NCBI RefSeq assembly: GCF_006345805.1
Contig: NC_043008.1
Span: forward strand, 52,142,001 to 52,206,000
Direction of reading: 5' to 3'
From: Octopus sinensis
Taxonomy: Eukaryota
DNA: 64,000 nucleotides
The position numbers and the translations under genes are program-made. The notes beneath the pieces were generated by a model. That model did not search any database. It was not told the origin of the DNA and was given only the letters and a program-made list of their open reading frames with translations. Shown here piece after piece: positions 27,184 to 51,694 of this stretch. Within the stretch, counting starts at the first letter, position 1. Each line of letters starts with the position of its first letter.

Positions 27184-27520
27184 TTATCTGCATATATATT
27201 TGATAGGCTGTGTATAAAGTTCCTCAATATTAGGATTATTAAGATTGTCAATAGTTTGAGGAGGTTGAGCAGGTCTTCTTGGCTCTGGCATTGCATATAA
27301 ATCACAATCGACAGCTACAACAGATGCTGCGTCTGATTTTGAATCTATATTTTCATATACATCTAGAGAATCTTGTTGTAGAGTGCAAAATTCCAATCTG
27401 GGTTCACTGATAGCAACTGAATTAGTAGCTCGTATAGAGACACGGTTATTAACTTCACCAACGACTTGAAGAGTTGAGTTGTTATCTTTGTTTACTTTCT
27501 TGTTACTGGACACCTTATTT
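27184..27520 (-). CDS. Terminal exon of a type I membrane receptor: cytoplasmic tail with three Tyr motifs
   Basis: Acceptor ttgtatattgtctattgcag|A at 27520 (phase 2, joins the TM exon as AG|A = Arg); NKVSSNKKV..DVYENI..DLYAMP..ELYTQPIKYICR-stop. Confidence 0.75.
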
Positions 27521-27619
27521 CTGCAATAGACAATATACAAATGACTGAAACAAGTAAAAGAGTAAAAGAATATATATATTTGAGAAAATGAATTCATTTT
27601 TCAAATATATAGGACTTTC

Positions 27620-29055
27620 TATTTCTTATTCTACTATATATTCTAATATATATATATATATAGTTAATTAAATATGTCCTTTGAAAACAAGGTGTATCAG
27701 ATGTCTAAAAGGTGTCTAAAATATTTAGAGATTCATGAGAGTGATTATATATTAGTAAAACAGTGGAATAGTTATATCTTAAAAATCATGATAAAGATAA
27801 GTATATAATATTAGCAATATTGTATTAATAAATAAATATAGTACAGCTATAATTATTAAAAAGTTTAAAAGTTCTAATAATTATTTTGTGAATATACTTC
27901 CTTTTAAGATGAAATCTAAAGTTGATATTCATCGTTGAGACGTATATAAACTCATCAATTTGATGTTAACAATTATTATGCCTCTATACCACTGATCATA
28001 TTAATCAAAGCTGTAAATTAAGCCAGAAGTCTCTCTAATATTACACCACTTGAAATCGATATAATACTATTAGCTAGAAAAACACTTATTAAGTTTAATG
28101 ATAAATTATGGTACTATGCTACAAATAATAATTTATTTGATATCACCGTGGGATCTCCTGATTCTTTACAAGTTACAAACTTGGTAAGCTTAGACCTATT
28201 ACATAAGACTAGAAAATATTTTTCTTCTCTCAAAGGGGGATTATACAGAGATGATACTTTCTTGATATATAATGGCCGCTCCAAAAGAAAAATAGGAAAA
28301 ATAAGAACTCCATAATTTCTTTAAAAATTTTGTTTTATCTATTTCCTTTGAAGAAAGCTATTGTAAAGCAAATTTTTTAGATGTAACTCTGTATCTCATT
28401 GCTTCAACTTATTCTTCTTTCCACAAACCTAATGAATACCTAAAATATATAACCATTCTTTCAAACCATCATAAATCATTACTAAAGAACTGTATAAACA
28501 GTATATCTATTAGAATCTCATATTTTTCCTATAATGAAGAAATATTCAATAATCATGCAAACTATTATAATCAAGGTTTAGTTGTAAGTAGATTTAAGCA
28601 ACATATCAAATATATAAAAGATATAAAACTTAAGAATTATATAGCACAAATGGAACTAAACCAACCTACGCATACTATTAAATTATAAATTACAAATAAC
28701 TTTATTACTAACAATAATATTTAAAAAATACAAAATGATCAAACCTCCATAAAACATGGCAAAAAACTTAGAAAATGTTATAGTTGACATAGAATCAAAT
28801 ATAAGAATAATAACAAAAAAAAAAAACACACAGGAAATACCATACAATTTCCAAAATTAATTTATAACTATAATAAATCATCTAGAAATTATTTGGTACA
28901 CATCCCCATTTTCAATAAATGTTAAAGAACTCGCAAAAAAAAAAAATTTTTCTAAACATCGTAAAAAATAGTTTTCCTAATATCATAATAATATCACCAT
29001 ATATTTAATAGATCAACAATTAAAATTTCTTTTTCCACATTGCTGAACATAGTGA
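27620..29055 (+). mobile_element. Penelope-like element RT relic
   Basis: FDVNNYYASI, ARKTLIKFNDKLW, FDITVGSPDS, GGLYRDD, NFLDVTL, HKPNEYLKYI..SNH, and a later IFNRSTIKISFS linker; many frameshifts. Confidence 0.8.
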
Positions 29056-29059
29056 AATT

Positions 29060-30130
29060 GTGAGAGAGAAAAAAGTAGAGATTTCAGAGAGAAAAGAAAT
29101 TGAGAAGTGTCTGGCCCTCATCTGGCCAGAAATAACTTACATGGCCAGGGATACCAAATATGTCACAATGGAGGGAAGGTTCTTGTCAGAGGAAAAGGCC
29201 AAGCAACACTCTGTGGCCTCATTGTCTTTGGACAATATCATCCTCCTACCCTCCTACCTTAGAAGGCAGGCTTCCAGGGTAAGGGTGGAGGAGTTAGCAC
29301 CAGAGGTAGATGTTGCCTGGTTAGTGGCAGTGATAGTGTTGGACCTGGAAGAGAAGGGGACAATCCCCCAGGTTGTGAGAATACCTGAAAGGAACTGGCT
29401 GGGGCAAGGCCTGGAAATGGTCATCCAGGCTACCCTAGTAGACCTAAATGCTATCACAGAAACCATAGTGGTGGGTGATAGGAAACTGAGAGTAATGGTG
29501 GAGGGAAGGAGGCCTAGGTGCTTCAAGTGTGGCCAGAAAGGCCACATTACAGCTGAGTGTCCTCCTTGTCCTGCAAAAGTTGCAATGACTATACCGATGA
29601 AGACCACACTTCCACCCATTGAAGGATCAAAGTTGGAAGGAATACATGAACCAAAGGAAAAGAGGAAATAACAGAGGAGGGAACAGCAGTGAAGAGGAAG
29701 AAAAACAGAAAGTGGCAGAAGAGGATGCATACCAGTGGTGAGGATCCCCAGCCTGGACCCATCCTACCCCCAACCTCTCCTACCCCAACCCACCCTTCCC
29801 CCGTAGACACAAGACCTTGACATACCCTGCTAAGCACTGACCCTGTACCTATAAAAAAACAAGCAGTGCACATAGAAAGCAAACCTCCCAATCACCATCT
29901 CATGTGTGTGTGGGGGGGAACCCCTTTGTGGTATATAGTAAAGAGAATAAGAACTTAGTGAAAAAGCTTAAAAATATAAACAAATTGATAAAGAGTGACA
30001 TTTCTGAGGATTACCCCCTCATATGGAAGGGTGCTCATTGACAGTGGGCACATTCAAGAACTCAAAGAGGTGTTTGGGAAGAAAGACTGTGATTTGGAGG
30101 AAGAAGTGGAAACAGCTGGACTAAAAGATA
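29060..30130 (+). mobile_element. Tx1/L1-like LINE ORF1 relic (CCHC knuckle)
   Basis: ORF 29060-29671 ends ..LRVMVEGRRPRCFKCGQKGHITAECP; it begins where the PLE relic is cut off. Confidence 0.7.
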
Positions 30131-30530
30131 TGGTATGGTCATATAATTTGTTTAAACGGTTCAAATGAAAACTGTTTCATCCAGAATACACTATAAAAGA
30201 GTGTGGGGTTCAAGTTGCCATCATTCCATCTTCCATTTTTTTGCATTTCATTTTCATCAGTTTTTTCTTCCCCCCAATTTTGTGTTTTGTTCGTCTTTGT
30301 GCTGTCCCCTCTGTGTAAGACCCTCGTGGTTAGTTAAAAATAACTCACATTTATGGATTATGCACAGAAGAAGAAATAGATCAGAGGAATTCTATCTTTA
30401 TACAGCCATCACAGGTTTTTACCACAGATTTTTACCATGGACTTATTCTACTTTTTAGAGTTTTAGCTCAAATTTATACCAACACAGATATATGAATACC
30501 AATAATTTTTTAAACAACATTTTCCTCATT

Positions 30531-30728
30531 TGAGCAGACCTAAGTACCCCAAATATATCTTTAACAGAAAATTTTCGAAAAATTTTATCCTATATTAGAT
30601 GTAAATTTAATAGTGTTCTTTTCCGGACTCTCTCACTCTGTGAAAGTTTCTAGTTCGAATCACACGTGTCTCGAGATGTGCTGAAGATTTTCTATTTTGG
30701 ATATACTTGGGGTACTTAGGTCTGCTCA
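30531..30728. repeat. Inverted repeat with ~30-50 bp arms (MITE-like)
   Basis: TGAGCAGACCTAAGTACCCCAAATATATC pairs with GATATACTTGGGGTACTTAGGTCTGCTCA. Confidence 0.75.
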
Positions 30729-31086
30729 GGACTTAGTGCTTGCTTTTTCCATGGGTATGAGTAAGTATTTCATTTATGTCTTACGTATTTATCGCTGAGG
30801 AGGAGAAAATTCTTATGAATTAACTCTGAAATTGGGACCAATACGGTAATAATGGAATTTTTTAGAAACTTCTAATGGCTTGTTTCGAGATACGTGTTAA
30901 TAGTGATTAATTATAATGGTTATTGACAATTTGTCTATTTTCAGCATATTTGGCATTAGAATTTTTTTCTTTTGTCCTTATTTTATAAGTTATTTATAAA
31001 TTTAACCTTAAAGGTGTTTTTTAATGATAAAATTTTTTTCAAAAAATTTTATCCCATGTTAGATGTATATAAAATGTGACCTCGTG

Positions 31087-31272
31087 TGTACCGTTGCCGA
31101 TTTTTTTTTTCTCTGTCTTCCCTTCTCTGGATCTTTCCTTCTCCTATGTTTCCAACGAAGAGCTCCGCTCGAAACGTTAAACCCTCCTTCTTTCCTGAGC
31201 GTCCAATAATACTATATTTGTTCCACGTCCTCGCGTTGTTGTGTTTTTTTGTGCTTTCTTGTTTGGATTAAC
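31087..31272 (+). mobile_element. Hammerhead-carrying non-coding repeat (motif 31148-31182, core decayed to CCAACGA)
   Basis: GTTT CCAACGA A GAGC TCC GCTC GAAAC GTT AAAC; ends at (TA)n. Confidence 0.65.
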
Positions 31273-31296
31273 TATATATATATATATATATATATA

Positions 31297-31545
31297 TCAT
31301 CATCATCATCATCATCATCGTTTAACGTCCGTTTTCCGCGCTAGCACGGGTTGGACGGTTTCGACCGGGGTCTGGGGAGCTCGGGACTGCCCCAGGCTCC
31401 AGTCTAGTTTGGCAGTGTTTCTAAGCTGGATGCCCTTCCTAACGCCAACCACTCCGCGAGTGTAGTGGGTGTTTTTTACGTGCCACCTGCACAGGTGCCA
31501 GAGGGGTCTGGCATTGGTCACGTTCGGATGGTGCTTTTTATGTGG
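31297..31545 (-). mobile_element. RTE 3' end fragment
   Basis: (CAT)n-CGTTTAACGTCC..GGATGCCCTTCCTAACGCCAACC. Confidence 0.85.
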
Positions 31546-31559
31546 GGGGGGGGGGGTGC

Positions 31560-32150
31560 AGAAATATAGGGAAGCACCAGTGGGGAGGGGTGGTTCAGAG
31601 AAATGATGACAGGTTCTAGGCAAGTAGAACGTAGGATATCGAGAGAGGGGTAATGCATGGTGAAATAGCGTATTGAAGAGGGGGGGGGTTCGAAGAGTAG
31701 ACACCTATAATGGTGGTGGGAGAAGCGACATCCGGTATAGATGGAGCAAAAATATAGATATCCAGTATTGGTGGTGGGGGTGGGTAGGGCGGGTGCACCG
31801 CGAAGATACGAATGTTGATTAATACGAGGAGAAATGATATGAAATGAATAAGATTAGATAAGATAGACAGATAGAGAAATTTGATAAAATTATGAATGGT
31901 CAAAGATAGACAGAGAAATTTGATAAAATTATGGTAAAGAGTTGAAAATAGCAATTCAAAACACCTATCTTGTTCGCAAACGGAAATTCACAGCTTGTAG
32001 ATGAGAGAGAGAGAGAGAGAGAGAGATAGTACATGTGAATTAGAGAGAAAAGGCTTCAAGATGGCGCGAAGATACGAATGTTGATTAATACGAGGAGAAA
32101 TGATATGAAATGAATAAGATTAGATAAGATAGACAGATAGAGAAATTGAT
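31560..32150. repeat. Unclassified GA-rich interspersed repeat
   Basis: 31680-31800 resembles 39030-39160; 31800-31890 is duplicated at 32065-32150. Confidence 0.55.
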
Positions 32151-32152
32151 AA

Positions 32153-32189
<37 letters not shown>

Positions 32190-32214
32190 ATATATATACA
32201 TACATATACATACA

Positions 32215-32844
32215 TCATCATCATCATCATCATCATCATCGTTTAACGTCCGCTTTCCATGCTAGCATGGGTTGGACGGTTCAACTGGGGTCTGGGAAGC
32301 CCGAAGGCTGCACCAGGCCAGTCAGATGTGGCAGTGTTTCTACAGCTGGATGCCCTTCCTAATGCCAACCACTCCGAGAGTGTAGTGGGTGATTTTATGT
32401 GCCACCGACACAGGTGCCAGACGAGGCTGCAGACGGCCACGCTCGGATGGTGTTTTTTATGTGCCACCGACACAGGTGCCAGACGAGGCTGGCAGACGGC
32501 CACGCTCGGATGGTGTTTTTTATGTGTCACCGACACAGGTGCCAGACGAGGCTGGCGGACGGCCACGCTCGGATGGTGTTTGTTACGTGCCCTCAGCACG
32601 GAGGCCAGTCAATTGCGGTACTGGCTACGGTCACGTTCGGATGGTTTTCTTATGTGCCACCGGCACTGGTACCACAAGGATACAAATTCCATTGATGTTC
32701 ATCTATTTTGATTTGGTTCGATTTGATTCGATACGATTCGATTCTCACTTGCCTCAACAGGTCTTCACAAGTGTCACAAGAAGGAAGGTATGCACAGGTG
32801 GACTGACTACGTCCCAGGTAGGGGCCACGGATTATGGCTTCATA

Positions 32845-32850
<6 letters not shown>
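32215..32850 (-). mobile_element. RTE 3' UTR with ~60-bp internal tandem repeats
   Basis: About three to four TTTTATGTGCCACCGACACAGGTGCCAGACGAGGCTGGCAGACGGCCACGCTCGGATGGTG units. Confidence 0.85.
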
Positions 32851-32886
<36 letters not shown>

Positions 32887-33055
32887 ACATATGGTATGAT
32901 TATAAATGGCAGATTTTAGTCATTTTTCCACAGACTGAAAAAATGATGAACAACCTTAATTGATTTTTGAACCTTATTGGGTTCTTATCAGAGATATCTA
33001 GATCATTCTGACAGCCTTCAGAGAAACAAGAAGCCGAACTGTTTCATGCACACAT

Positions 33056-33090
<35 letters not shown>

Positions 33091-33544
33091 GCGCGCGCAC
33101 ACACACACACACAGAGGAATGCACATATACTCCACAACCCCACACACACATACATGTATACACTCACACACAGACGCATGCACACACTACATAGAAAATA
33201 CACACACACACACACAACATATACATGCACGCACACACACATACTTTAAACTGCCAGTTAAATACCTTTCTACTGACCACAACTACACAAAAGACTGCCT
33301 CTCTTGCTACTAAATACTTCCTACAACATTAAGCAACACAAAGTTCACTCACACATACACATATAAACAGCCAAAACCACACACACACACACAACAAATA
33401 CACACACCTATGCACACACACAACACATACACACAGACTTGCAGGCATGCACACACCCACACATACCTCCTTCTCGTACACTCTCTTGTCTTAGAAAGAA
33501 TTTTTTCTTTACCCATTTCCTTCTGGTCATTTCAAAATGCAACC

Positions 33545-33735
33545 ACATGTAAATCGTTGGCAAATTTCTTCCTCCGTCTTCCCTTCTATTGGACTTTTCC
33601 CTGTTTCTGAAGAAGAGTGTCTGCTTGAAACTTAAACAATCTTTCTTTCCTTTCCTGAGTGTCTGCTAATACATTACATGTACCACGTCCTCGTGTTGTT
33701 GCATTCTTTGTCTTTGTTCTCTTTTGGAATCACTA
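33545..33735 (+). mobile_element. Hammerhead-carrying non-coding repeat (motif 33603-33637, intact CTGAAGA core)
   Basis: GTTT CTGAAGA A GAGT GTCT GCTT GAAAC TT AAAC; paralog of 31087 and 15180. Confidence 0.65.
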
Positions 33736-33844
33736 TATATATATATATATATATATATGTAGGTCCCGGGTTGATCCGGGGTTAACCACAGTAAGTAAGG
33801 TACTCAATACATAGCAGAGTAAAATTAATTTATTATATAGAAGG

Positions 33845-33895
33845 AGCTTCTACAGGACTAGTACTGTTTCATTCAAGAGAAATCTTCAGGAAGCT
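33845..33895 (-). ncRNA. Type I hammerhead ribozyme (left-arm copy)
   Basis: Exact reverse complement of 37497-37547. Confidence 0.7.
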
Positions 33896-34055
33896 ATTTA
33901 ACAAGAATTGTATTAGCATTTATACATTTAGGCAGGTTTAAAGGAGTGGTGGTGGGGGACTTTTTTGGGGGTAGGCATAGCGCAAAATATCATACTTGGG
34001 GGAGTGGTCAGGGAGTCAGTGGTAAGTTAGATGAAAGAATAGATAAATAAAAAAT

Positions 34056-34086
<31 letters not shown>

Positions 34087-34225
34087 ATAAAAAAATAAAA
34101 AAATAAAAAAATAAAAAAATAAAATGTGTGCACATACATACATAAACACATATACATACACACACACATACGTACACATGTGTGCCTATACATACCTACA
34201 CATACACACATACATACATATATAT

Positions 34226-34261
<36 letters not shown>

Positions 34262-34587
34262 CACAATCAAATACAGGCCCATTCCCTAATTTTAATTTTA
34301 TTATCTTCATTTATTACTTTTGTTATCTTTGATCGCTAGGGCTAAGGATCCTGGCGATGGCAGCATGTCCAATTGTCTGTCTACTAGAAGGCAAGTACTC
34401 GTTCCCGCACGCACACTCATTAGCACGTACATACACCCATTCGTACACTCATACACATACACGTACGCACGCGTTATATTCATACATACAAACATCTACA
34501 TACGTTCACGTATATACACATACGTACTCGTACCTACAGATTCATGTCTACACTTTAGGAGGCTAGTCTATATATATACACCAATAA

Positions 34588-34638
<51 letters not shown>

Positions 34639-34703
34639 TACACACACACACACACATATATATACTCCTACATACAGATACATACCCATATATATATACA
34701 TAT

Positions 34704-34740
<37 letters not shown>

Positions 34741-34993
34741 CATACATATATATATATATATAATATATATATATATATACATACATACACACACACATAT
34801 ATATACACACACATACATACACATATATATACATACACAAACATATATACACACATATATATATATACATATATACACACATACATACACACACCTACAT
34901 ACATATACACACAAACACATACATACGTAAACATACATACATACATCCATACATCCATACTTACATGCATTTATACGCATACATACACCCCCA

Positions 34994-35079
<86 letters not shown>

Positions 35080-35698
35080 TACATATACAAATATACGCCC
35101 ACACATACATACATACACGTATACGCATACACGCACATACACATATACATGCGTACCCATACACGTGCACACACGCACATGCATCCATATATATACACAC
35201 ACACACACATATATACACGTGTGCAAGCATACATACATACTCATACACGCACACATACTTACATATACATATATGCACACACTTACACACATATATACAT
35301 ACACATATACATGCATACATACATATATGCATACATACACATACACGCACATACACATATACACATGCGTACCCATACACGTGCACGCACGCACGCGCAT
35401 CCATATATATACACACACACACACATATATATACACGTGTGCAAGCATACATACATACTCATACACGCGCACATACTTACATATACATATATGCACACAC
35501 TTACACACATATATACATACACATATACATGCATACATACATATATGCATACATACACACACGCGCACTCATATATACATATATATACATATATATATAT
35601 ACATATATACACATATATATATACATATATATACACAAACATATATATACACATATACACATACACATACATGCACACCTACACACACATACACATAC

Positions 35699-35729
<31 letters not shown>

Positions 35730-35819
35730 CACATATATACACATATACACATACATATATACACACATACATACATATACATACACACACACATACATAT
35801 ATACACGGATACACATACC

Positions 35820-35862
<43 letters not shown>

Positions 35863-36022
35863 GTATACACATGCATATACTTATATCTCTACATACTCAC
35901 ATATAAACATATATATATATACACACACACATATATATACATGTACACACACATACACATATACATACATATATACACATACACACATACATATATATAT
36001 ATATATACACATACACATATAT

Positions 36023-36063
<41 letters not shown>

Positions 36064-36078
36064 CCCCCACATATATAC

Positions 36079-36115
<37 letters not shown>

Positions 36116-36762
36116 TACATATACACATATACATGTATACATACGCAATAATGATACACATATATACACATACACACACACAGACAGATGCATATACATA
36201 CATATATATATATATAAATTACATATCTATATAAATACATACATAATACACATATACACACACAAATATACATACATATACATACACATATATATACATA
36301 TATATATATATACATATATATACATACATATACATATATATACACACACATACATACACATGCACATACATATACAAATATACATACACATACATACACA
36401 CACACGCGCGCACATACATATACACACACACATGTACAAATACATACATACACACATACACACACACACATATATATACATACATGTACACATATACATA
36501 TATATATATATCAACAAGGGAGGGTGAAGTTAATTAGTTATTAATCAAATTCACCAAGAATTCAGTATGTAAAGGGACCATTATTATTTTGAGTAAACAA
36601 TGTTAGAGGGAAAAAAATTCTCTAAGTAGTGGAAGAGGCTAAAAACCTTTATTGGCTGCTATTTCTAGAAAGTTTAGTATGTGGCAAAGTATGTGGCAAA
36701 GTATGTGGCAAATGGGTATGTATCTGTATGTAGGAGTATATATATGTGTGTGTGTGTGTGTA

Positions 36763-36817
<55 letters not shown>

Positions 36818-37139
36818 TTATTGGTGTATATATATAGACTAGCCTCCTAAAGTGTAGACATGAATCTGTAGGTACGAGTACGTATGTGTATATACGTGAA
36901 CGTATGTAGATGTTTGTATGTATGAATATAACGCGTGCGTACGTGTATGTGTATGAGTGTACGAATGGGTGTATGTACGTGCTAATGAGTGTGCGTGCGG
37001 GAACGAGTACTTGCCTTCTAGTAGACAGACAATTGGACATGCTGCCATCGCCAGGATCCTTAGCCCTAGCGATCAAAGATAACAAAAGTAATAAATGAAG
37101 ATAATAAAATTAAAATTAGGGAATGGGCCTGTATTTGAT

Positions 37140-37188
<49 letters not shown>

Positions 37189-37496
37189 GTGTATGTGTAG
37201 GTATGTATAGGCACACATGTGTACGTATGTGTGTGTGTATGTATATGTGTTTATGTATGTATGTGCACACATTTTATTTTTTATTTTTTTTTTTTTTTAT
37301 TTTTTATTTTTTTATTTTTTATTTTTTTTTTTTTTTTATTTTTTATTTATCTATTCTTTCATCTAACTTACCACTGACTCCCTGACCACTCCCCAAGTAT
37401 GATATTTTGCGCTATGCCTACCCCCAAAAAAGTCCCCCACCACCACTCCTTTAAACCTGCCTAAATGTATAAATGCTAATACAATTCTTGTTAAAT

Positions 37497-37547
37497 AGCT
37501 TCCTGAAGATTTCTCTTGAATGAAACAGTACTAGTCCTGTAGAAGCT
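37497..37547 (+). ncRNA. Type I hammerhead ribozyme (right-arm copy)
   Basis: Stem I AGCUUC/GAAGCU; core CUGAAGA; stem II UUC-UCUU-GAA; GAAA; stem III ACAG/CUGU with palindromic ACUAGU in the loop; GUA cleavage after 37541. Confidence 0.72.
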
Positions 37548-37563
37548 CCTTCTATATAATAAA

Positions 37564-37604
<41 letters not shown>

Positions 37605-42021: not shown

Positions 42022-42195
42022 TTGTCCCCCTTCCATACTCAAACACATATGTGTATGTCATGACTCATGCACTGTTCTTTTCCTGACGCTTGTACATTAC
42101 CTTATGTACTATACATACACTTTAGATGAGTTGTAGTGCACCTGAGCACTGTACACAATGTTTTATTATTATTTTTATTATATATATTAGCATAA

Positions 42196-42227
<32 letters not shown>

Positions 42228-42840
42228 GCATGCATGCATATGTATATATGTATGCATGTATGGATGTCTCCATTTAATAGGGTTAGGGTTATTCAGAATT
42301 AGCCTTCAAATTATGATAATGACGTCATAATCCAGAAATGTATCGATATATCGCTGAAAACATTTAGATTATCCTTTAATAAAATTAAAAATTAAAAATC
42401 AAAATCATTTAATTTATTCCTTCCTTCTTAATTACAGTAACTGTTAAAAAATAAATGTAAAACAAAATGGAGTGTTCATACATTGACGTGTACAAAGACG
42501 GGTACATGTATGATGGGTACCTCAGTTTTTCTACCAGATCCATTCATCAAGTTTTGGGCAACCCAGGGTTAAAACAGATGATACTTGCCCATGCTACACA
42601 GAGTAGAAGTGAACTCAAAAGCAAACTTCTTAAATGAATGGTCATGCCCGTATGTTTTACACACACACACACACACACACTGGTAATGTTCTATTTGCTA
42701 TCTATGAAGAAAACATACATACATACAGATAAATACAAGCATAACTATACACATACACACACATACACACACACATACTCACATGCAAACACAAAAAGGA
42801 AACAAAATGAGAGTAAAGAGTAATAAGATAAGAGTTTTAC

Positions 42841-42904
42841 CTGGCAATGAGTACGATGATGATGATGATCGAGATTAATATGATGACCGCAAGGAGGCCT
42901 ATAA
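42841..42904 (-). CDS. Transmembrane exon of the type I receptor
   Basis: ttattgttttcttccacag|TT ... GCC AG|gtaaaa; phase 1 to 2; encodes (V)IGLLAVIILISIIIIIVLIA(R). Confidence 0.8.
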
Positions 42905-44400
42905 CTGTGGAAGAAAACAATAAGATGCTCAGTCAAGCAATACTTTATGTATACTTAAGTGGCAGCTAATATACCTAATGTAATAAGGAAGAATAAATTT
43001 GTCATCATTCAAAATTACAAAAGTAATTTAGAAAATATTAATTAGCTGTGTTGATAATTGCTGTCAAAATCAAGAGAGACAATTCCAAGATGGAAATCAA
43101 TAAAAAATTGAATGGAGACATAGTACTAGATATGTTTTGGTCTTATTAAACCTCTTCAGTAAAATATACTGGTATTCATTCTTATCAAACCCCACACTCT
43201 CCCAGCTGCATAATTCCAATAGTTTGAATGTTGAAGGTGTCACTCCTCTTTTTAACAAGGTTTATCATTAATACTAAGGATTTTTCTTTTCATCGTGAGT
43301 GTAATTTTAACTCTTAACTTCCGGTACTATGATCTAACACCACAAGGAAACCTTGTTTATGTTTATTTGTAGGGCAGTTGAGACCTGTCTAATGTAAGGA
43401 GGAAAAGCTCTAATCCCTTCTATCATTCAGTTTTATTTAGTCACATAATTATTACAAGACTGGGCTTTTGTCTTTGAAAATTTTCACTATGATTTTAAGA
43501 GTTAATTAAATATTTTGGGGTGGGGAGTTAATGAGTTAAATTTGTTAACCTCATTTTACTCCCTGTCTTTCATTCAGCTGCAGTCTTTAAACCGCTAAAT
43601 ACCAGCTTAATAATGGCAAGTTTATTTTCAAAGTTAATTAAAACTACTGTAGAGTATTTGAATAGAAATATGGTAACAAAAAGGGTTGAACTCATACAAA
43701 AAATTCACTCCCAGTTATAAAATCATATTTGAGGAGAATTAACTGGCATCCATAACTAACAAACCATGACAGAACATGACCCCTATTTTCAATACATGAC
43801 ATTAAGTGGGTATCATTTAAGTGACACTCAGATAATAAATACAGAATTTCTCACTTCTAAATTCACTCAGAGGCACTTGATCTTTAGCCCCAGGATAGTG
43901 AAGACAACATTTATCCAAGGTAACATGTAGAGGGACTGAACTTGAAAACATGCAGTTGCAGAATGAAAAGATTATAAAGAAAAATAAGACGATGTATAAA
44001 GAAAAATAATTACCTATTTTCACGATGAGGTTTGATTTATTAGAATGTATTTTCTCATGTTTCCCTTCATTCTCTAAAAAGCAAAGAATAAATTTTAATT
44101 AAAAATTAACAAAAATATCTCTGAAATACACAAACATTATTATTGATCTGAGAAGTCCAATCCAGTTTTTTGTAGGGATTGTTAATCTCAGTCATCAATG
44201 CCATCAATTTGGAGGAATCATTCAGTCAGGAAGAAATTCTTGGACAGAAGAAATAGCTGATGACAACATCAAATGATGAACAGATAGCTAATATCATCAT
44301 CATCATCATCATTATTTTGATGTCCACATTATTGTTGAAGCAGATCTTCTAAGGCCAGATAACCTTTCTCTTATCAACACACACACATTAGTGTCTGTTC

Positions 44401-44444
<44 letters not shown>

Positions 44445-44519
44445 CAATACTTGTGTGTATGCGTGTGTATGTGTGCATGTATAATATTATTATATTGTTG
44501 ATTGGGAAGAACAAGCTGG

Positions 44520-45020
44520 TCTGTTTCAGGGGACTTTTGTGCTAGGAATTACCATGAATAATTTCCAGAAATCCCTGGCCTGGCAGTGTCACTGAGGAGC
44601 ATTGCCATTTCAAGGTATGTGCTGTTAGACAGGACTGTCTGAGTTGTGTGCAGATTGACAAAGCCATACTGTATGCACTCATGTGTAGTTTGAGTACTGC
44701 TGACTTGTGAAGAAATGTTGAGCAGCTGTTTATCATGTGTAGGAAAGATCTGATAATCAGCTGAGTCCATCACGAAGACAGCCTCACTACCTGCCTTAAA
44801 CAAAACAGAGCAAGCAATATTTCTCTGTCTAGAGGCTATGGCAAATAAGTTTGTGTGATGGATGAAGTTCAAAGGGCCAAGGAAAGATACCGTCCTCTTC
44901 AGTCAAGCCTTCATCAACTTTTTCAAGTTCCACTTGGAAAGGAAAGCAAGGGTAGAGAGGGGAGTGCCATCTCCCAGTGAATTTGTGAAAAGATGAGTGA
45001 CTGTGGAAATAATGGAAGTG
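44520..45020 (+). mobile_element. Tx1-like LINE ORF2 3' relic
   Basis: MNNFQKSLAWQC..QAIFLCL..FINFFKFHLERKARVER; similar segment at 45500-45600. Confidence 0.55.
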
Positions 45021-45024
45021 AGGC

Positions 45025-45175
45025 ACGGGCATGGCTGTGTGGTTAGGGAGCTTGCTTCCTAGCTACATGGTTCGGGTTCAGTCCCACTGCGTGGCACTTT
45101 GGGTAGGTGTCTTCCACTATAGCCCCGAGCCGACCGGAGCTTTGTGATTGAATTCGGTAGGTGGAAGTTACTGCC
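45025..45175 (+). mobile_element. SINE family B head
   Basis: GCATGGCTGTGTGGTTAGGGAG..GGGTTCAGTCCCACTGCGTGGC. Confidence 0.8.
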
Positions 45176-45259
45176 GTGTGTGTAGGTGTGCGTATAGCTG
45201 CTCAGTGCCTCTCCGAAAGAGAGAGAGAGAATGACCCTACTCTGAGCATGTGTCTGCAG

Positions 45260-45800
45260 ATTGAAGAACAACAGTTGGCCAAGAGCAATTTCCTTTATCC
45301 AGATTGAGACTGGGCACCTGGCACTTAGAAGGATGTCAGATGCTGACAGTCCTTTACCAGTTGGGCAATGTGATAGGTGGATGTTCCCCTTTAGCAATAT
45401 ATAGAGGATTAGTAGTGGGGAAATGCAACAATGTCATTGAGGAAGCCCTCGATGTTGATGAAAGCAAACTGGCTAGTTTGTTTTGAGGGACTTTCTGATC
45501 AGGGACTACTATGAATAATTTCCATAAGTCCTTGGTTTGGGAGTGCTACTGGGGTGGTTATGAGTTTGAGATAAACACTGCAGGCATGGACATGCTTTTC
45601 TGACGTGTGTGCAGAACAACTAAACTGTTCAGTACAGGGAGGTGCTGTCCTCAAGTAAATTTATTGAAAGGGGTGGGGAAGTTGTGAAAATGATGAGAGT
45701 GCTCAAAGAATTGGAGACAGCACTTTCCCTAGTTGTTCAGGGAGATCTTGGACAGTGGAGTTTCTTGCTTCTCCATAGAGGTCCTCCTGAATCAGGAAGC
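45260..45800 (+). mobile_element. Second Tx1-like ORF2 relic
   Basis: GGGACTTTC..ATGAATAATTTCCATAAGTCCTTGGTTTGGGAGTG aligns with 44530-44590. Confidence 0.5.
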
Positions 45801-46044
45801 ACACATCACTTTCAACTTTTAATTTTTCTTCTTTTCTTTAACTGTTGTGTATTATGTACACTTCACTTCTTTGTTTTATTGTATACTGTGCATACTTTCC
45901 TCCCCTTTTTTTTTTTAATCATTTCATTATATGTAAACCTCTATACTTTAACTCTGTTCTTGTATTGCCCCCTCATCCTTCACTCTGGTGGCGAAAAAAG
46001 GAAACCGTCGCCGCCGTCGTCGTCATCATCATCATTATTATCAT

Positions 46045-46335
46045 TATTAAGTGAGAGAGCAATGCATGCCACCAAAGTGATATTGGGGTACAAATATACA
46101 AAGCTCAGTACACCCATCTTGACTACTTTTTTGATAAGAGTACACCAGGCACATGCATCACAACCATATGTGCATAATATGGGGATCTCATATCAAGATT
46201 AACAGTGCATGACCTTGCGGGTGGAGCCCAGTTAGAATTTTCTTCAAGATGAGTAGCCCATTCCACTCAAAAGGTCTCTTAATATGGTTTACTTAAGGAT
46301 GATGAACAAAACATTCGTGTTTCCAGTTAAAATGC
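46045..46335 (-). repeat. Second, diverged copy of the 224-645 repeat
   Basis: Reverse complement of the 340-645 region; the tail runs into ATT/ATC repeats. Confidence 0.7.
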
Positions 46336-46374
46336 TGAAGGATTAAATTAAACAATTTCAGATACACCATATAC

Positions 46375-46474
46375 CTTTTGTTATTGGGATAAATTCTGGC
46401 ATCAAGTTATCTTGAGTTTTGCTTCCTCCATTTGTTTTGAATTTATACTCTGTGATATTGTTGATCAAACTTAT
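46375..46474 (-). CDS. Juxtamembrane ectodomain exon of the receptor
   Basis: ctatcatttcag|ATA ... AAA G|gtatat; phase 0 to 1; ISLINNITEYKFKTNGGSKTQDNLMPEFIPITK, with an NIT sequon; G|TT joins the TM exon as Val. Confidence 0.65.
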
Positions 46475-46649
46475 CTGAAATGATAGATTTGAAATTTCAT
46501 TAATATAACCCACCTGATTGAACACTGATTATGATTTGCTTCAGTTCATTGTCAAGGTGTTGATGCTGTTTGTCCTTGCATTCACTATTGGTGTCAACAT
46601 TCTGTAGGGAAGACACTTCAAATATTTTCCATCCCTCCAAATCAATCAA

Positions 46650-46855
46650 TCAATCATCGTTTAACGTCTGCTTTCCATGCTAGCATGGGTTGGATGGTTC
46701 AACTGGGGTCTAGGAAGCCAGAAGGCTGCACCAGGCCAGTCTGATCTAGCAGTGTTTCTACAGCTGGATGCCCTTCCTAACGCCAACCACTCCGTGAGTG
46801 TAGTGGGTGCTTTTTATGTGCCACCGACACAGGTGCCAGACGAGGCTGGTGAAAG
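46650..46855 (-). mobile_element. RTE 3' end fragment
   Basis: Same terminal motif as 31297. Confidence 0.85.
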
Positions 46856-47594
46856 GCCTAATCAATAAATCAATAAATTAATCAATCAATCAAACAACCA
46901 ATAATATTTATATTACAAAAGTTTAATAAATAGATTCCACTGATTGACTTTTCTCCTAACCAGATGTTACTGTCAATGGGTTATTAACATTTTTCTTTTT
47001 AATTAAAAGAGTGAATATGTGGATTTAGTACGGAGGCTCAGTAGAACAGTCAACAATTTACTTTGCTCTCATTGCTTTCAGCTGTAAGATGTATCATATG
47101 GGGTACCTATATGCACTGTAGTGGAATAGACCAGAAAGAAGTGAGCAACATTGGAGATAAATTTTTAGTTATTCACGTGGTAGAGTAACACTTTGTGAGG
47201 GAGGGGTTTAGTTGATTACACTGACACAAAGATCATCATCATGATCATCATAATCATCATCATCCCCACCACCACCACCACCACCAGAGATCAGGGATGG
47301 TAAGTAGATGGGGAGGATGAAGGGAATAAGGCGGGGAACAGAGAAGAGAAGGGTTAGTTATAAGGTTGAGAAAAAGGAGGATCAGAATTGAAAGGAGAAT
47401 GTGTTTAGTGGGGGACAGGTCTAGGGCTATCCATCATTATAAGTATGTTTTAGAAAAGAATGAGAAGTAAACTTGGTTCCACTGAGAGTGTGGACCCAAC
47501 CATTTTGAAGTATCAAATGCATTCTCATAAAACATGCAGCCTGCCTCCCTATCATCTTTAGATATTTTAAAATAGAATAAAAATATAATTTTAC

Positions 47595-47821
47595 TTCACT
47601 GATCCTCAGAGATTTATCAAAGAAATTGAATCTTAGGCTTGTGATTTCACTGTCTTCATATGTCTTCAGATTAAAATATCTAACATAGTAATCTCCATAT
47701 ATAGCTAGATGTTTCCAAAACAACTTTCTAGAGGAAGAAGATAACCCGTCTTGATTTATTTCTACGGTGAAATTTCGTTCATGTTCTTCAGGAGAAATAA
47801 CTTTCAACACCCAATCTTTGC
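47595..47821 (-). CDS. FN3-like ectodomain exon of the receptor
   Basis: tttatatttcag|GC ... GAA|gtaaaa; phase 1 to 0; KDWVLKVISPEEHERNFTVEINQDGLSSSSRKLFWKHLAIYGDYYVRY.. resembles the FN3 P.N.TV..S.S..L.W..Y.V.Y pattern; NFT sequon. Confidence 0.65.
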
Positions 47822-47855
47822 CTGAAATATAAATTCAGAAAATGTCTTTTAGTGT

Positions 47856-47891
<36 letters not shown>

Positions 47892-47984
47892 ATATGCACA
47901 CCTAAATACATATACATTTAAATCTGTAAGACCCTTAAGTGATGCATTTATATCGTTCACCTAAAGTACTCATAATTTGTTACA

Positions 47985-48975
47985 TCATCATTTGGATTTG
48001 TGGAAGTAATGATGTGGAAGTGTGGTAAGAAGTGGAGATGTGGCAGTATGGTAAGAAGTGCAGCATGGTAAGAAGTAATGATGTGGGAGAGTATTAAGTA
48101 ATAATGATGTGTCGTGTGTGGTAACAAGCAATGATGTGGTAATGAGGTGAGAAGTAATGAGGTAGCAGTGTAGTAAAAGTAATAATGTGGCAGTGTGGTA
48201 AGTAGTAATGATGTGGCAGTGTGATAAGAAGAAATGATGTAGGAGTGTGGTAAGAATTCACGATGTGGTTGTGTAGTAAGAAGTACAGATGTGGCAGATG
48301 GTAAGAAATAATGATGTAGCATTGTGTTAAGAATTCACGATGTGGTTGTGTAGTAAGAAGTACAGATGTTGCGGTGTGGTAAGAAGTAATGATGTAGCAT
48401 TGTGTTAAGAATTCACGATGTGGTAGTGAGGTAAGAATGATATGGAGGTGTGGTAAGAAGTAAGAAGTGCAGATGTGGCAGTGTAATAAAAGTAATGATG
48501 TGTGAATTGGTAATAAGTAATGATGTGACAGTTTGGTAATAATTAACGATGTGGTAGTTTGGTAACAAGTGATAATTTGGGAGTGCGGTAAGAAGTAATG
48601 ATGTGGCAGTGTGGCAAGAATTAATGGTGATACAGTGTGGTAAGAATACTGGTGTGACAGTGTGGTAAGAAGTAATGATGTAACAGTATTGTAAGAAGTA
48701 AAGATGTGGTAATGTGGTAGTGAAGTAAGTAGTAATAATTATGCGGCCGTCTGGTACGAAGTAATGATTTACTAGTTTTGCAAGAATTAATGATGTGTGA
48801 ATGTGCTAAGTAGTATTGATGTAGCAGTGTGGTATGAAGTACAGATCTGGTAGTGTGGTAAGAAGTAATGACATATTAATGTGCTAAGAAGTAATGATGT
48901 GGCTGTGTGGTAATAATTAATAATGTAGCAGTGTGGTAAGGAGTAATGATGTGGCAGTGTTGTAAGAAGTTTGCT
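47985..48975 (+). repeat. Degenerate ~26-bp minisatellite (GATGTGGCAGTGTGGTAAGAAGTAAT)n running into a SINE B head
   Basis: Tens of copies; the last unit continues as GAAGTTTGCTTGCCAAC..GGATTCATTCCCACTG. Confidence 0.85.
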
Positions 48976-49039
48976 TGCCAACTGCATGGTTTGGGATTCA
49001 TTCCCACTGTATGGCACCTTTGCCATGTGTCTTCTACTA

Positions 49040-49840
49040 TCAGGGTGGTCTGAAAAGTTCATAGGCTGTGTATGAAGGAGAGATGCTACAGTTGTGAAAT
49101 CTTGCATGCATTAATTTCAAATCTTCCTATTAATAAAGAAATAGTTTCTTTCCATCGAAACTGACATCTGACTGTTCAAAGAAGACTTCAAACGTAAGAA
49201 CTTGCCACTTCTCTTGCAAAGGGACAAAGTCTGGCATCGTGGTATTATCAAGTATTTGTAGTAAAAGTGATTAGACCCCAAGAACTGTCATACAGACATG
49301 ATTGCTACATTAATGGATAATGCTCCAGCTTTAATGAGAGTGCAAAAGTTAGCATCTGAGGGGAAGAGAGAGTCTTGAAGATGGCTCAATGTCTGAATGA
49401 TCTGCAATTGCCACCACTCAGGAAAACAATTATTGTGTTCACCACTTGGTGATGGATGATTGATGATTAACTATAAATTAAACTAGCAGTATCGCCCGGC
49501 GTTGCTCGGGTTTGTAAGGGAAATAACTATATAAGCATTTTTAGAGAGTTACTTCCCTTATATAACCCGAGCAAAAATCATTAAAAATGCGGAAAAATGA
49601 TGGTAAATTTTTTTTTAAATCGTAGACTCATTGTAGACGCACGCTAATACCCAGAAGGGCTCGATATGAATCACGACTATAAGATACCCGCTTTTGGTTA
49701 AACTGCACTGCAAAATGTGGGAGTAGTTAGGAATCTAAATCGGAGTAGACAGACACACACACACACAACTTTAGTTTTATATATAAAGATAGCGAATGTT
49801 ATTTGCAAAGCCAGTGAGAAAGTAGTGAGGAGATGACAAT
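49040..49840 (+). mobile_element. Mariner 5' end relic (TIR plus HTH region), interrupted by a Helitron
   Basis: TA-TCAGGGTGGTCTGAAAAGTT TIR-like start; HRGIIKYL..GRESLEDG..ATTQEN..VHHLVMDD..LTIN|IANV. Confidence 0.7.
49483..49789 (-). mobile_element. Non-autonomous Helitron, 307 bp
   Basis: Minus strand: host A|TCTTTATATATAAAA ... CCCGAGCAACGCCGGG hairpin ... CTAG|T host; no TSD. Confidence 0.88.
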
Positions 49841-50984
49841 GGACCAAGGTGTATGGCAATATGAGGTTGTTGAGAAGACTCATCCACCAAAACAAAACTG
49901 AATTCTGGAAGCACTCTGTGTTATTCTGCCCATACTCAACATTAATTCTTAAACTCCACCCCAATGAACCAAACTTCATCTCTTCATGCACTATACTTTC
50001 ACTCCCTATCACTCCTACCATCCAATTCTGCTCTGTCATCTATCTCATCTGTCTTCCCTCAGCCAGCTGTATCATTGCTATCCTGCTGGTCCCCTATATA
50101 CTTGTGTCTCACCACTCACTGCATCCCCGTTCTCCTCCCTTCATCTCTTTTGCACTCTCATGAACTGTTTGCTCACTATCCCAATCCAGTCCTCTCTTCT
50201 ACCCCATTTACATTCATCTCCTAATATCTAGAGGCACACACTGGCACGTTGCCACCATCTCTCTCAGTCTTTCTCTCTCTCTTTCCCACAGACTGGGGTA
50301 ACCCTCATCGTCTGGCACAAAGCCACCTCTCTCAATATCACTCTCCCTCCCAGTTGAGGGGTTTTTGGGATACAAATTCTTCAGTAACCTCACTGGTGTT
50401 GGTGCCATGGGGAAAAGCACTCAATACACTCTGTAAAATGGTTGGCATTAGGAAGTCATCTAGCAATAGAAACCCTGCCAAAACAGACAACTGGAGCTTG
50501 GTGCAGTCCTCTGGCTCACCAGCCCATGTCAAACTGTCCAACCCATGCCAGCATGGAAACAGACAATGTGTGTGTGTATGTGTACTCGCTCACACACACA
50601 CACACAGTGTTACCAAGTCTGCACTCTATGACATTACATTGTCATTTCATGCACACCCATAAATATCTTGAGACCAATAAAATATCCAAAGGCTCAGTTT
50701 GCAGAAAACCTGTAGAATTTGTTGGGATGGTTGATTGTTTCAATCTTTTGGATTACTTAAGCTGTACACCTCATTATCTCTCAAAACTACATTAGCTACT
50801 ATACCTTCAACTACCTCCTTAACTATTTTGATACCAACTCTCTCAATATCACGCCTAGTTCTATCATACAAAACTCCAGTTTTAAAGTGATTGAAATTAA
50901 AACCTTCCAATAAAATTCAATGTTAATTTATGTTTCAAAAATCATTTTAATAACCACAAAGTCATTTTAATATATTCTTCATTG

Positions 50985-51180
50985 AGCTGGCAGAAATGTT
51001 AGCATGCCAGGTGAAATGCTTAGTGGTATTTTGTCTGTCTTTATGTTCTGAGTTCAAATTCTACTGAGGTCAACTTTGCCTTTCATCAAAAAATTATGTA
51101 TCAGTTGCATACTGGGGTCGATCTAATCGACTGGCCCCCTCTCCAAAAATTTCGGGCCTTGTGCCTTGAGTAGAAAAGAA
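50985..51180 (+). mobile_element. SINE family A
   Basis: GAGCTGGCAGAAATGTTAGC..GAGTTCAAATTC..GTAGAAAAG. Confidence 0.8.
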
Positions 51181-51624
51181 TATATTCTTCATTATTTTCA
51201 AAATTAATTAAAACTATTTCAATTAAAATACAGTAACTAAAGAATTTATCTGTGAACTGCCATTCAAGACTGAGTGATAATATTTATTTCCAATGTAAAA
51301 TGGACACTAATATATAATTAATATGAAGACATTTTAATTGGTCTAATTAATAAATGTTGACATGGCTGTGTTGTTAAGAAGTGTGGTTTGGAATCAAGTG
51401 ACATTAGGTTCAATCCCCCCATGTGTCACCTTGGGCATATGTCTTTTGCTTTACCTTCAGGTTGACTAATGCCTTTGATTGAGCATTGTTGTACTTAAAT
51501 GCTTAAAGAGCAGTTCTTGAAATATCTTTGACTCCCTCATCTAACCTTAGCTCTGATGTTATTACTAGCTTAGGCTCAATTATTTGTATGTTGCTTAGCT
51601 AAGATGGCAGAACCTAACACTTAC

Positions 51625-51694
51625 TTCTAACAGTCTGTCTCAATACACTGGAGCCTTGTTTGCATATCCTGTTGCTAGCCCAGTACATCTGGTC
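51625..51694 (-). CDS. Upstream ectodomain exon of the receptor (candidate)
   Basis: tttctctatacctattttatatag|GAC ... AGA A|gtaagt; only phase 0 is open: DQMYWASNRICKQGSSVLRQTVR; A|GC joins the 47821 exon as Ser. Confidence 0.55.

What the first reader, a model, noticed from the sequence alone, without database searches (positions are those of the whole stretch)
27184..51694. Hidden single-pass FN3-like receptor gene spanning at least 24.5 kb
Seen: five minus-strand exons with canonical AG/GT ends join in frame through four junctions (A|GC Ser, phase 0, G|TT Val, AG|A Arg). The product reads ectodomain with N-glycosylation sequons, PITK-VIGLLAVIILISIIIIIVLIA-RNK (hydrophobic span, then a basic stop-transfer), and a ~110-aa tail. 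Three of the exons are absent from the ORF track. No signal-peptide exon was found, so the 5' end is upstream, in the gap, or outside the window. The FN3 call is pattern recognition only, and I do not recognise an ortholog.
Basis: partly seen in the sequence, partly recalled or inferred. Interest (0 to 1): 0.72.

Follow-up and report, generated by a model that had tools for sequence, protein, structure and literature searches.

The report
Octopus receptor gene, 3' half

Summary
The five minus-strand pieces do join in frame as described.

- Exon A (51694-51625) has no support.
- The exon C acceptor lies 39 nt further downstream, at 46474.
- A 60-nt mini-exon (44073-44014) between C and the transmembrane exon was missed.

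The corrected exons C-C'-TM-tail are identical to the last 186 aa of Octopus sinensis RefSeq XP_036363872.1. Exons B to tail align end to end with O. bimaculoides LOC106873224 residues 322-585 at 73% identity. They also align with an Argonauta hians protein.

The full gene has 12 coding exons. It spans about 109 kb in the gapless O. vulgaris locus. In this assembly three exons fall in the N gap at 60312-60411, and the signal-peptide exon lies about 105 kb beyond the window.

The family is restricted to octopods and has no Pfam domain. The membrane-proximal domain models as a PLAT/LH2-like beta-sandwich, not FN3.

The ectodomain exons diverge faster than the introns between O. sinensis and O. 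vulgaris, while the tyrosine-motif tail is unchanged. This is an annotated but unstudied gene of moderate interest.

The parts
47595..47821 (-). Exon B (family coding exon 8, 227 nt, phase 1 to 0). It encodes most of the membrane-proximal beta-sandwich domain (KDWVLKVISPEEHERNFTVE...SLRISE) and carries one N-F-T sequon.
   Evidence: Splice sites tttcag|GC...GAA|gtaaaa. Family HMM E = 1.7e-38. At least 15 open paralogous copies in the genome. dN/dS of 0.2-0.4 against paralogs. 73% identity to the O. bimaculoides ortholog across exons B to E. Intact in O. vulgaris. Not found in any retrieved O. sinensis protein.
46375..46474 (-). Exon C, corrected (coding exon 9, 100 nt, phase 0 to 1): ISLINNITEYKFKTNGGSKTQDNLMPEFIPITK. 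It completes the domain.
   Evidence: Acceptor catttcag|ATAAGT. Identical to XP_036363872.1. All family members start this exon at I/V-S/N-L. HMM E = 6.4e-12.
44014..44073 (-). Mini-exon C' (coding exon 10, 60 nt, phase 1 to 1): (E)NEGKHEKIHSNKSNLIVKI. It is the extracellular stalk just before the membrane.
   Evidence: tttttag|AGAATG...AAATAG|gtaatt. Present in P0001, P0030 and P0007.
42841..42904 (-). Exon D (coding exon 11, 64 nt, phase 1 to 2): the transmembrane helix VIGLLAVIILISIIIIIVLIA.
   Evidence: Identical in XP_036363872.1. HMM E = 0.004. One synonymous difference from O. vulgaris.
27184..27520 (-). Exon E (last coding exon, 337 nt including the TAA stop). It encodes the 112-aa cytoplasmic tail, which has a basic stop-transfer (RNK), ISEPRLEFC and three tyrosine motifs: DVYENI, DLYAMP and EELYTQPIK.
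   Evidence: 0 of 337 nt differ from O. vulgaris. All motifs are conserved in O. bimaculoides and Argonauta hians. Single copy in the genome.
51625..51694 (-). It is an open 70-nt AG...GT segment that is not supported as an exon.
   Evidence: No HMM hit and no DNA similarity to the family's exon 7. Absent from all 55 family proteins. Intronic in the mirror paralog, where it is 70/70 identical like the surrounding intron. Thousands of equally valid chance candidates exist.
60312..60411 (.). Scaffold gap (100 N). By comparison with O. vulgaris, it hides about 22 kb that carries three coding exons (aa 184-216, aa 212-290, and exon 7 at aa 284-322).
   Evidence: O. vulgaris L033 61.7-83.7 kb has no counterpart in the O. 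sinensis scaffold. Collinearity resumes at window 60001.
46323..60311 (.). A tract nearly identical to the inverted paralog LOC115217841 (C12:51.786-51.799 Mb). It covers exon A-like, exon B and exon C, and ends about 50 nt after exon C.
   Evidence: 13.5 kb at 0.75% substitutions, against 1.1-1.75% to the O. vulgaris ortholog. This points to recent gene conversion or duplication.

Best explanation
Window 27184-47821 (minus strand) carries coding exons 8-12 of a 12-exon gene for a type I membrane glycoprotein of about 580 aa. The gene belongs to an Octopoda-restricted, tandemly expanded and uncharacterised family. Named members include O. sinensis LOC115217841 and LOC115218043, and O. bimaculoides LOC106873224.

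Shown:
- The exon structure and the orthology.
- The family's restriction to octopods at HMMER sensitivity.
- A single transmembrane helix.

Modelled (AlphaFold models of paralogs):
- A signal peptide followed by four beta-sandwich domains.
- The last domain (exon 7 + B + C) has a PLAT/LH2-like fold next to the membrane.

Inferred mechanism: the protein is a kinase-less surface receptor. A fast-diversifying ectodomain binds an external ligand. An invariant cytoplasmic tail is phosphorylated on three conserved tyrosines by cytosolic kinases, and these tyrosines then recruit SH2 adaptors. YENI is a pYxN motif of the Grb2 type. YAMP and YTQP are pYxxP motifs of the Crk/Nck/Abl type.

The gene's 5' exons lie in the scaffold gap and up to about 105 kb beyond the window.
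For: - RefSeq identity. The corrected exons C-C'-D-E are identical to the last 186 aa of XP_036363872.1.
- Orthologs. Exons B to E align with O. bimaculoides P0007 residues 322-585 at 73% identity, E = 1e-131. O. vulgaris P0035, the adjacent upstream gene model, aligns with P0007 residues 1-322.
- O. vulgaris locus. L033 plus L025 is gapless and holds all 12 exons in order with an intact frame.
- 5' exons in O. sinensis. The signal-peptide exon and the aa114-184 exon are about 94% identical to P0035 and sit upstream at ext 169481 and ext 125166 (ext = window coordinates continued past 64000; add 52,142,000 for C12).
- Argonauta. P0038 aligns collinearly at E = 2e-30, including the tail motifs.
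- Family breadth. A profile search gives 30 hits; those traced to a source are all Octopus or Argonauta. No Pfam domain and no PDB sequence match were found.
- Structure. The P0011 model shows a signal peptide, an all-beta ectodomain and a transmembrane helix, with pLDDT 72. The P0002 domain model hits PLAT/LH2 domains with probability 1.0.
- Tail motifs. A YxN motif occurs in 17 of the 19 tails scanned.
- Evolutionary rates. Ectodomain pN is 5.8% against an intron rate of 0.95% (p = 7e-16), while the tail shows 0 changes in 337 nt.
Against: - No transcript evidence could be examined.
- The O. vulgaris annotation splits the locus into two models. The upstream one skips exon B and runs out of frame into exon C.
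- O. sinensis RefSeq attaches the window's last four exons to the upstream paralog, not to exon B.
- Three exons are missing from this assembly, so the gene's integrity in O. sinensis is not proven.
- The conservation of the tail between the two close species is not significant on its own (P about 0.08).
- The PLAT-like call rests on a model with pLDDT 75 and on Foldseek E-values of only about 1e-3.
- The SH2-docking reading comes from motif consensus alone.
Confidence: 0.82

Rival explanations
1. The window's exons C-C'-TM-tail act as a shared 3' cassette. Upstream paralogous ectodomain units (LOC115218043, the window gene's own 5' exons, and perhaps others) would each splice onto them. This would be a variable/constant arrangement like clustered protocadherins or UGT1A.
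For: RefSeq isoform X1 of LOC115218043 joins that paralog's exon B (C12:52,353,343) to window exon C across 165 kb, jumping the window gene's own 5' exons and exon B. The O. vulgaris model P0035 also splices exon 7 straight to exon C. The near-identical paralogous tract ends just after exon C.
Against: LOC115218043 has its own exon C, TM and tail, used by isoform X2. The X1 model may simply be an annotation chimera forced by the scaffold gap that removes the true exons 5-7. The O. bimaculoides ortholog is an ordinary collinear protein. The P0035 junction is out of frame. No transcript data were examined.
Confidence: 0.12
2. In O. sinensis this locus is a decaying partial duplicate (pseudogene). 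Exons 5-7 are truly lost, exon B is unused, and the open frames persist only because the copy is young and is kept similar to its paralog by gene conversion.
For: Three exons are absent from the assembly, and the 5' region appears twice and scrambled. No retrieved protein uses the window's exon B. Exons B-C' show 7 nonsynonymous and 1 synonymous changes against O. vulgaris (the second synonymous change lies in the transmembrane exon).
Against: The missing segment abuts a 100-N scaffold gap. The inter-gap contig is a redundant copy of the 5' region, which is typical of a mis-scaffold. The frame is intact through all 12 exons in O. vulgaris and in the O. bimaculoides ortholog after about 34 My (divergence time from PMC10700109). 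The nonsynonymous rate exceeds the intron rate, which relaxed constraint cannot produce. The tail is unchanged.
Confidence: 0.08
3. One reading: a five-exon, FN3-like cytokine-receptor-type gene that includes exon A and joins exon C directly to the transmembrane exon.
For: The splice sites and frame are formally valid. Skipping the 60-nt mini-exon keeps the frame, so an isoform without it cannot be excluded.
Against: No fn3 signal by Pfam or Foldseek. Exon A and the long exon C are absent from every family protein. Exon A is indistinguishable from intron in the paralog comparison.
Confidence: 0.03

Closest known systems
O. bimaculoides LOC106873224 isoform X2 (P0007, 585 aa); O. vulgaris CAI9731345.1 + CAI9731344.1; O. 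sinensis XP_036363872.1 (C-terminal 186 aa)
   Same: These are orthologous or identical sequence. They share the exon order, the exon phases, the transmembrane helix and the tail motifs.
   Different: All are automatic 'uncharacterized protein' predictions. The O. vulgaris models split the gene. The O. sinensis model grafts the window's 3' exons onto a paralog's 5' half.
PLAT/LH2 domain (Pfam PF01477: C-terminal domain of pancreatic lipase, N-terminal domain of lipoxygenase, Rab6IP1)
   Same: The predicted fold of the membrane-proximal domain (exon 7 + B + C) is similar. About 117 columns align at rmsd of about 4.7 A with Foldseek probability 1.0, and 37 of the first 39 ranks are PLAT/LH2 domains.
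   Different: There is no sequence-level match to PF01477. The E-values are only about 1e-3. Here the domain is extracellular and next to the membrane in a receptor, not attached to an enzyme.
Fibronectin type III receptors (cytokine-receptor class)
   Same: A beta-sandwich ectodomain, one transmembrane helix and a kinase-less tail with tyrosines.
   Different: No fn3 Pfam match, no FN3 structure among the top Foldseek hits, and a domain that is larger (about 115-145 aa with 9-12 strands).
Clustered, fast-evolving non-kinase immunoreceptor families (vertebrate LILR/PirB/KIR)
   Same: Tandem gene clusters, gene conversion between paralogs, a hyper-divergent ectodomain with a conserved tyrosine-motif tail, and many splice isoforms. 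The best whole-chain Foldseek hit was PirB/LILRB3 (E = 2e-4).
   Different: That structural hit has a TM-score of 0.13, which reflects only a generic string of beta-sandwiches. There is no Ig domain by sequence. The tail has no canonical ITIM, ITSM or ITAM. No expression or immune data exist.

Membership tests
Octopod LOC115217841/LOC106873224-like receptor family | Significant sequence similarity across the ectodomain, the transmembrane helix and the tail | tested here: met
   HMM E = 1.7e-38 (B), 6.4e-12 (C) and 1.3e-10 (tail). 73% identity to P0007 over 264 columns.
Octopod LOC115217841/LOC106873224-like receptor family | Conserved exon plan and phases (exon 7 ends in phase 1; B is 1 to 0; C is 0 to 1; mini-exon is 1 to 1; then TM and tail) | tested here: met
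   The boundaries reproduce RefSeq XP_036363872.1 exactly.
Octopod LOC115217841/LOC106873224-like receptor family | N-terminal signal peptide and upstream beta-sandwich domains | tested here: inconclusive
   Not in the window. The signal-peptide exon (94.7% identical to P0035 aa 1-19) and the exons for aa17-184 lie upstream at C12:52.267-52.311 Mb. Three exons are lost in the scaffold gap.
Fibronectin type III (PF00041) | Match to the fn3 profile | tested here: not met
Fibronectin type III (PF00041) | Seven-strand beta-sandwich of about 90-100 aa that resembles solved FN3 modules | tested here: not met
   The domain model has 9 strands over about 115 aa. No FN3 structure appears in the top 50 Foldseek PDB hits.
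PLAT/LH2 (PF01477) | Match to the PLAT profile | tested here: not met
   No PF01477 hit.
PLAT/LH2 (PF01477) | Beta-sandwich fold that superposes on solved PLAT domains | tested here: met
   37 of the first 39 Foldseek ranks are PLAT/LH2 domains of lipases, lipoxygenases and Rab6IP1. Probability is 1.0, TM-score normalised to the query is about 0.42 on a 173-aa query, and rmsd is 4.5-6.4 A. The model has moderate confidence (pLDDT 75).
ITIM/ITAM immunoreceptors | (S/I/V/L)xYxx(I/V/L) or paired YxxL/I(x6-8)YxxL/I in the tail | tested here: not met
   The tail tyrosines read LDVYENID, CDLYAMPE, EELYTQPI and PIKYICR. None fits ITIM or ITAM.

The most novel reading that the evidence does not exclude
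The family may be an octopod-specific, rapidly diversifying recognition-receptor system (immune, or self/non-self, or contact chemosensory). Its N-terminal ectodomain exons would be driven apart by positive selection and exon-limited gene conversion. One conserved phosphotyrosine tail would carry the signal. Several variable 5' units might share the window's constant 3' exons.
Probability: 0.18. Interest if true: 0.75.

Novelty: already known. Interest (0 to 1): 0.38.

Why it matters
As an annotation matter it is minor. It corrects a reader model and exposes three imperfect public gene models:
- a chimeric RefSeq isoform in O. sinensis;
- a split gene in O. vulgaris;
- a scaffold gap that swallows three exons.

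Biologically, the family is an orphan. It occurs only in octopods, has no Pfam domain and turned up in no paper I could find, yet it has at least 15 loci in clusters. Cephalopods have no described diversified surface-receptor repertoire apart from protocadherins and GPCR or chemotactile receptors.

Between two species that split about 2.5 My ago, one ectodomain exon differs by 10% while its flanking introns differ by about 0.8%, and the signalling tail is unchanged. A family with that pattern is a reasonable candidate for a lineage-specific recognition system. It can be tested directly with existing RNA-seq data.

Tried and rejected
- Exon A as a decayed copy of the family's exon 7. By eye the peptides looked similar. 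However, the family HMM gives no hit there at domain E <= 10, and blastn of exon A +/-200 nt against the real exon 7 +/-200 nt finds nothing aligned. Rejected.
- Tail exon identity as proof of purifying selection. The 97-98% BLAST identity includes indels. The substitution-only divergence near exon E is 0.76%, which gives P(0 changes in 337 nt) of about 0.08. It is not significant alone, so I rely on the O. bimaculoides and Argonauta conservation instead.
- Whole-chain Foldseek of the 536-aa paralog model. It returned only low TM-score matches to unrelated multi-domain beta proteins and was uninformative. The single-domain model was needed.
- Gene conversion from one extant donor as the full explanation of the divergent D1 exon. 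The nearest paralogous exon in the genome is only 92% identical, so a single donor does not explain it.
- Literature. Four searches, including six LOC identifiers, found no paper on the family.
- The first protein search missed the RefSeq and O. bimaculoides full-length proteins. The tool only considers candidates of 0.55-1.75 times the query length. They surfaced later.

Full report
**Origin of the window.** The window is G000:C12:52,142,001-52,206,000 of a 2.719-Gb assembly in 13,516 scaffolds. Those figures match Octopus sinensis GCA_006345805.1 as tabulated in PMC10700109. The 79,792,878-bp contig also carries O. sinensis RefSeq proteins of the family.

**Check of the observation.** All have AG/GT boundaries with pyrimidine-rich acceptors. 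They join in frame through the four stated junctions into 278 codons that end at a TAA.

**What the exons belong to.**
- A six-frame search of the whole genome showed that exon B has at least 15 open paralogous copies. They lie in clusters on C12, C9 and C26 and on small scaffolds, and an exon C-like piece usually follows 1-2 kb downstream.
- Protein searches returned only Octopus proteins, all labelled 'uncharacterized' and none with a Pfam domain.
- A profile built from 24 members was scored against 1.84 billion representative proteins and found 30 hits. Those I traced to a source are from O. sinensis, O. vulgaris, O. bimaculoides and Argonauta hians.
- Pfam scans of all 24 members show only transmembrane-segment noise. 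A profile search of PDB sequences found nothing.
- The family is therefore restricted to octopods at HMMER sensitivity and is an orphan at the sequence level.

1. O. vulgaris CAI9731344.1 (P0001) and O. sinensis XP_036363872.1 (P0030) both contain 'ENEGKHEKIHSNKSNLIVKI' (V for the first E in O. vulgaris) between PITK and VIGLLAV. This is a 60-nt phase 1-1 mini-exon at 44073-44014 with good splice sites.
2. All family proteins begin exon C at 'ISLINN...', which is the acceptor at 46474.
3. Exon A is unsupported.
   - The near-identical mirror paralog LOC115217841 (P0011) is encoded at C12:51.76-51.83 Mb on the plus strand.
   - Its RefSeq model joins a true exon 7 ('...ILTGEEYGCANIDKTNSPEYSCKLLN') to exon B across a 14-kb intron that contains the exon-A-like sequence.
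   - Exon A has no HMM or DNA similarity to exon 7.
   - It is 70/70 identical between the two copies, just like the surrounding intron.
   - 2315 other AG...GT open segments in the 16 kb upstream of exon B end in the required phase.

With these corrections, the translation of exons C-C'-D-E is identical to the last 186 residues of XP_036363872.1.

**The whole gene.**
- Exons B to E (261 aa) align end to end with O. bimaculoides LOC106873224 isoform X2 (P0007) residues 322-585. Identity is 73% and E = 1e-131.
- In O. vulgaris the locus is collinear with the window. It carries two adjacent models. CAI9731345.1 (P0035, 330 aa) runs from the signal peptide to exon 7, then splices out of frame into exon C. 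CAI9731344.1 (P0001) starts at a methionine inside exon C.
- P0035 aligns with P0007 residues 1-322.
- On the gapless O. vulgaris sequence all exons lie in order: signal peptide, aa17-83, aa84-112, aa114-184, aa184-216, aa212-290, exon 7, B, C, C', TM and tail. Together they span about 109 kb, and the frame through B-E is intact.
- In O. sinensis the stretch equivalent to O. vulgaris L033 61.7-83.7 kb, which holds three exons, is missing. It falls at the 100-N gap at window 60312-60411.
- The 59-kb contig between that gap and the next one is a redundant, partly scrambled second copy of the 5' region.
- The signal-peptide exon is at C12:52,311,425-52,311,481.

**A likely chimeric RefSeq model.** XP_036363872.1 takes its first 393 residues from the paralog LOC115218043 at C12:52.353-52.375 Mb. 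It then jumps 165 kb to the window's exon C, passing over the window gene's own 5' exons and exon B. The simplest reading is an annotation chimera caused by the gap. A real variable/constant splicing arrangement is kept as a rival explanation.

**Fold.**
- AlphaFold2 on the mirror paralog, using the family alignment, gives a signal peptide, an all-beta ectodomain that divides into about four sandwich domains, and a transmembrane helix (mean pLDDT 72).
- The last domain is built from exon 7 + B + C. The window gene without exon 7 would therefore lack its first strands.
- A separate model of P0002 (exon 7 to TM, pLDDT 75) was searched against the PDB.
- Ranks 1-39 are PLAT/LH2 domains, except for an otoferlin C2 domain. 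They come from pancreatic lipases, lipoprotein lipase, lipoxygenases and Rab6IP1, with probability 1.0, about 117 aligned columns and rmsd of about 4.7 A.
- No FN3 module appears. No PLAT Pfam match exists either, so I call the domain PLAT-like in fold only.

**Tail.**
- The 112-aa tail carries ISEPRLEFC, DVYENI, DLYAMP and EELYTQPIK.
- All of these are conserved in O. bimaculoides. An Argonauta hians protein also has them and repeats the LYTQPIK unit.
- A YxN motif is present in 17 of the 19 family tails I scanned.
- From established SH2 specificities, pYxN suits Grb2-type domains and pYxxP suits Crk/Nck/Abl-type domains. This is inference and was not tested.
- There is no ITIM or ITAM.

**Evolutionary dynamics.**
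- Exon B evolves under purifying selection among old paralogs (dN/dS 0.2-0.4).
- Window 46323-60311 differs by only 0.75% in substitutions from the inverted paralog about 390 kb away. That is less than the 1.1-1.75% to the O. vulgaris ortholog, which implies recent gene conversion. The tract stops just after exon C.
- Between O. sinensis and O. vulgaris (split about 2.5 My ago per PMC10700109), intron substitutions average 0.95%. The ectodomain exons show 38 nonsynonymous and about 4 synonymous differences. That gives pN of 5.8%, six times the intron rate (p = 7e-16). For the conservative subset aa114-184 + B + C, p = 0.012.
- The N-terminal domain exon, which lies outside the window, differs at 20 of 201 nt. 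The 1.4 kb of flanking sequence differs at 11 positions. The nearest paralogous exon is only 92% identical.
- The tail exon has no change.
- Relaxed constraint cannot exceed the neutral rate. Positive selection, mosaic exon-limited conversion, or both must be acting.

**Verdict.** The finding is a real gene, but only its 3' half lies in the window. The gene is not FN3-like. Most of it already exists in public predictions, and the ortholog is annotated in O. bimaculoides. Its family is uncharacterised and has evolutionary features that merit follow-up with transcript data, which I could not access.

Noticed in passing
window 33824-34685 and 36720-37568: Inverted-repeat arms of about 860 nt (91-100% complementary) bracket about 2 kb of TA/CA microsatellite inside the TM-to-tail intron. 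The whole stretch 33761-37572 is absent from the collinear O. vulgaris locus. It is either a species-specific foldback insertion or a long-read assembly artefact.
   Followed up: partly
window 28022-29671 (+): Retroelement debris in the same intron. One ORF carries a CCHC zinc knuckle (Pfam zf-CCHC, E = 4.9e-5). An adjacent ORF contains a YRDD motif but has no Pfam hit.
   Followed up: partly
G000:C12:52,353,343-52,375,260 joined to window 46474-27184: RefSeq XP_036363872.1 (LOC115218043 isoform X1) joins a paralog's first 393 residues to the window's last four exons across a 165-kb intron. It is either a chimeric model caused by the scaffold gap or evidence of shared 3' exons.
   Followed up: partly
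G000:C12:52,223,692-52,223,892 (outside the window; exon for aa17-83): This exon differs at 20 of 201 nt (16 amino acids, no purely synonymous codon change) from its O. vulgaris ortholog. The 1.4 kb of flanking intron differs at 11 positions. The closest paralogous exon is 92% identical.
   Followed up: yes
window 60412-64000 and G000:C12:52,202,412-52,261,650: The contig between the two 100-N gaps is a second, partly reordered copy of the gene's 5' region, 97-98% identical to O. vulgaris L033 3-36 kb and 45-54 kb. It is likely a haplotig or a mis-scaffold.
   Followed up: partly
window 48094-48738 (-): A 214-aa open frame is made of a degenerate tandem repeat (...LPHHYFLPH...TSLLLTT...) in the intron upstream of exon B. 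It has no Pfam match. It is probably a minisatellite, not a gene.
   Followed up: partly
window 31.3-32.7 kb, 37.5-41.1 kb, 46.5-46.9 kb: Repeated SINE-like units carry a His-codon (CAT/CAC) run followed by 'RLTSAFHASMGW...'. There are also arrays of a unit of about 60 nt ('RCQTRLADGHARMVF'). Both recur many times in the paralogous locus as well.
   Followed up: no
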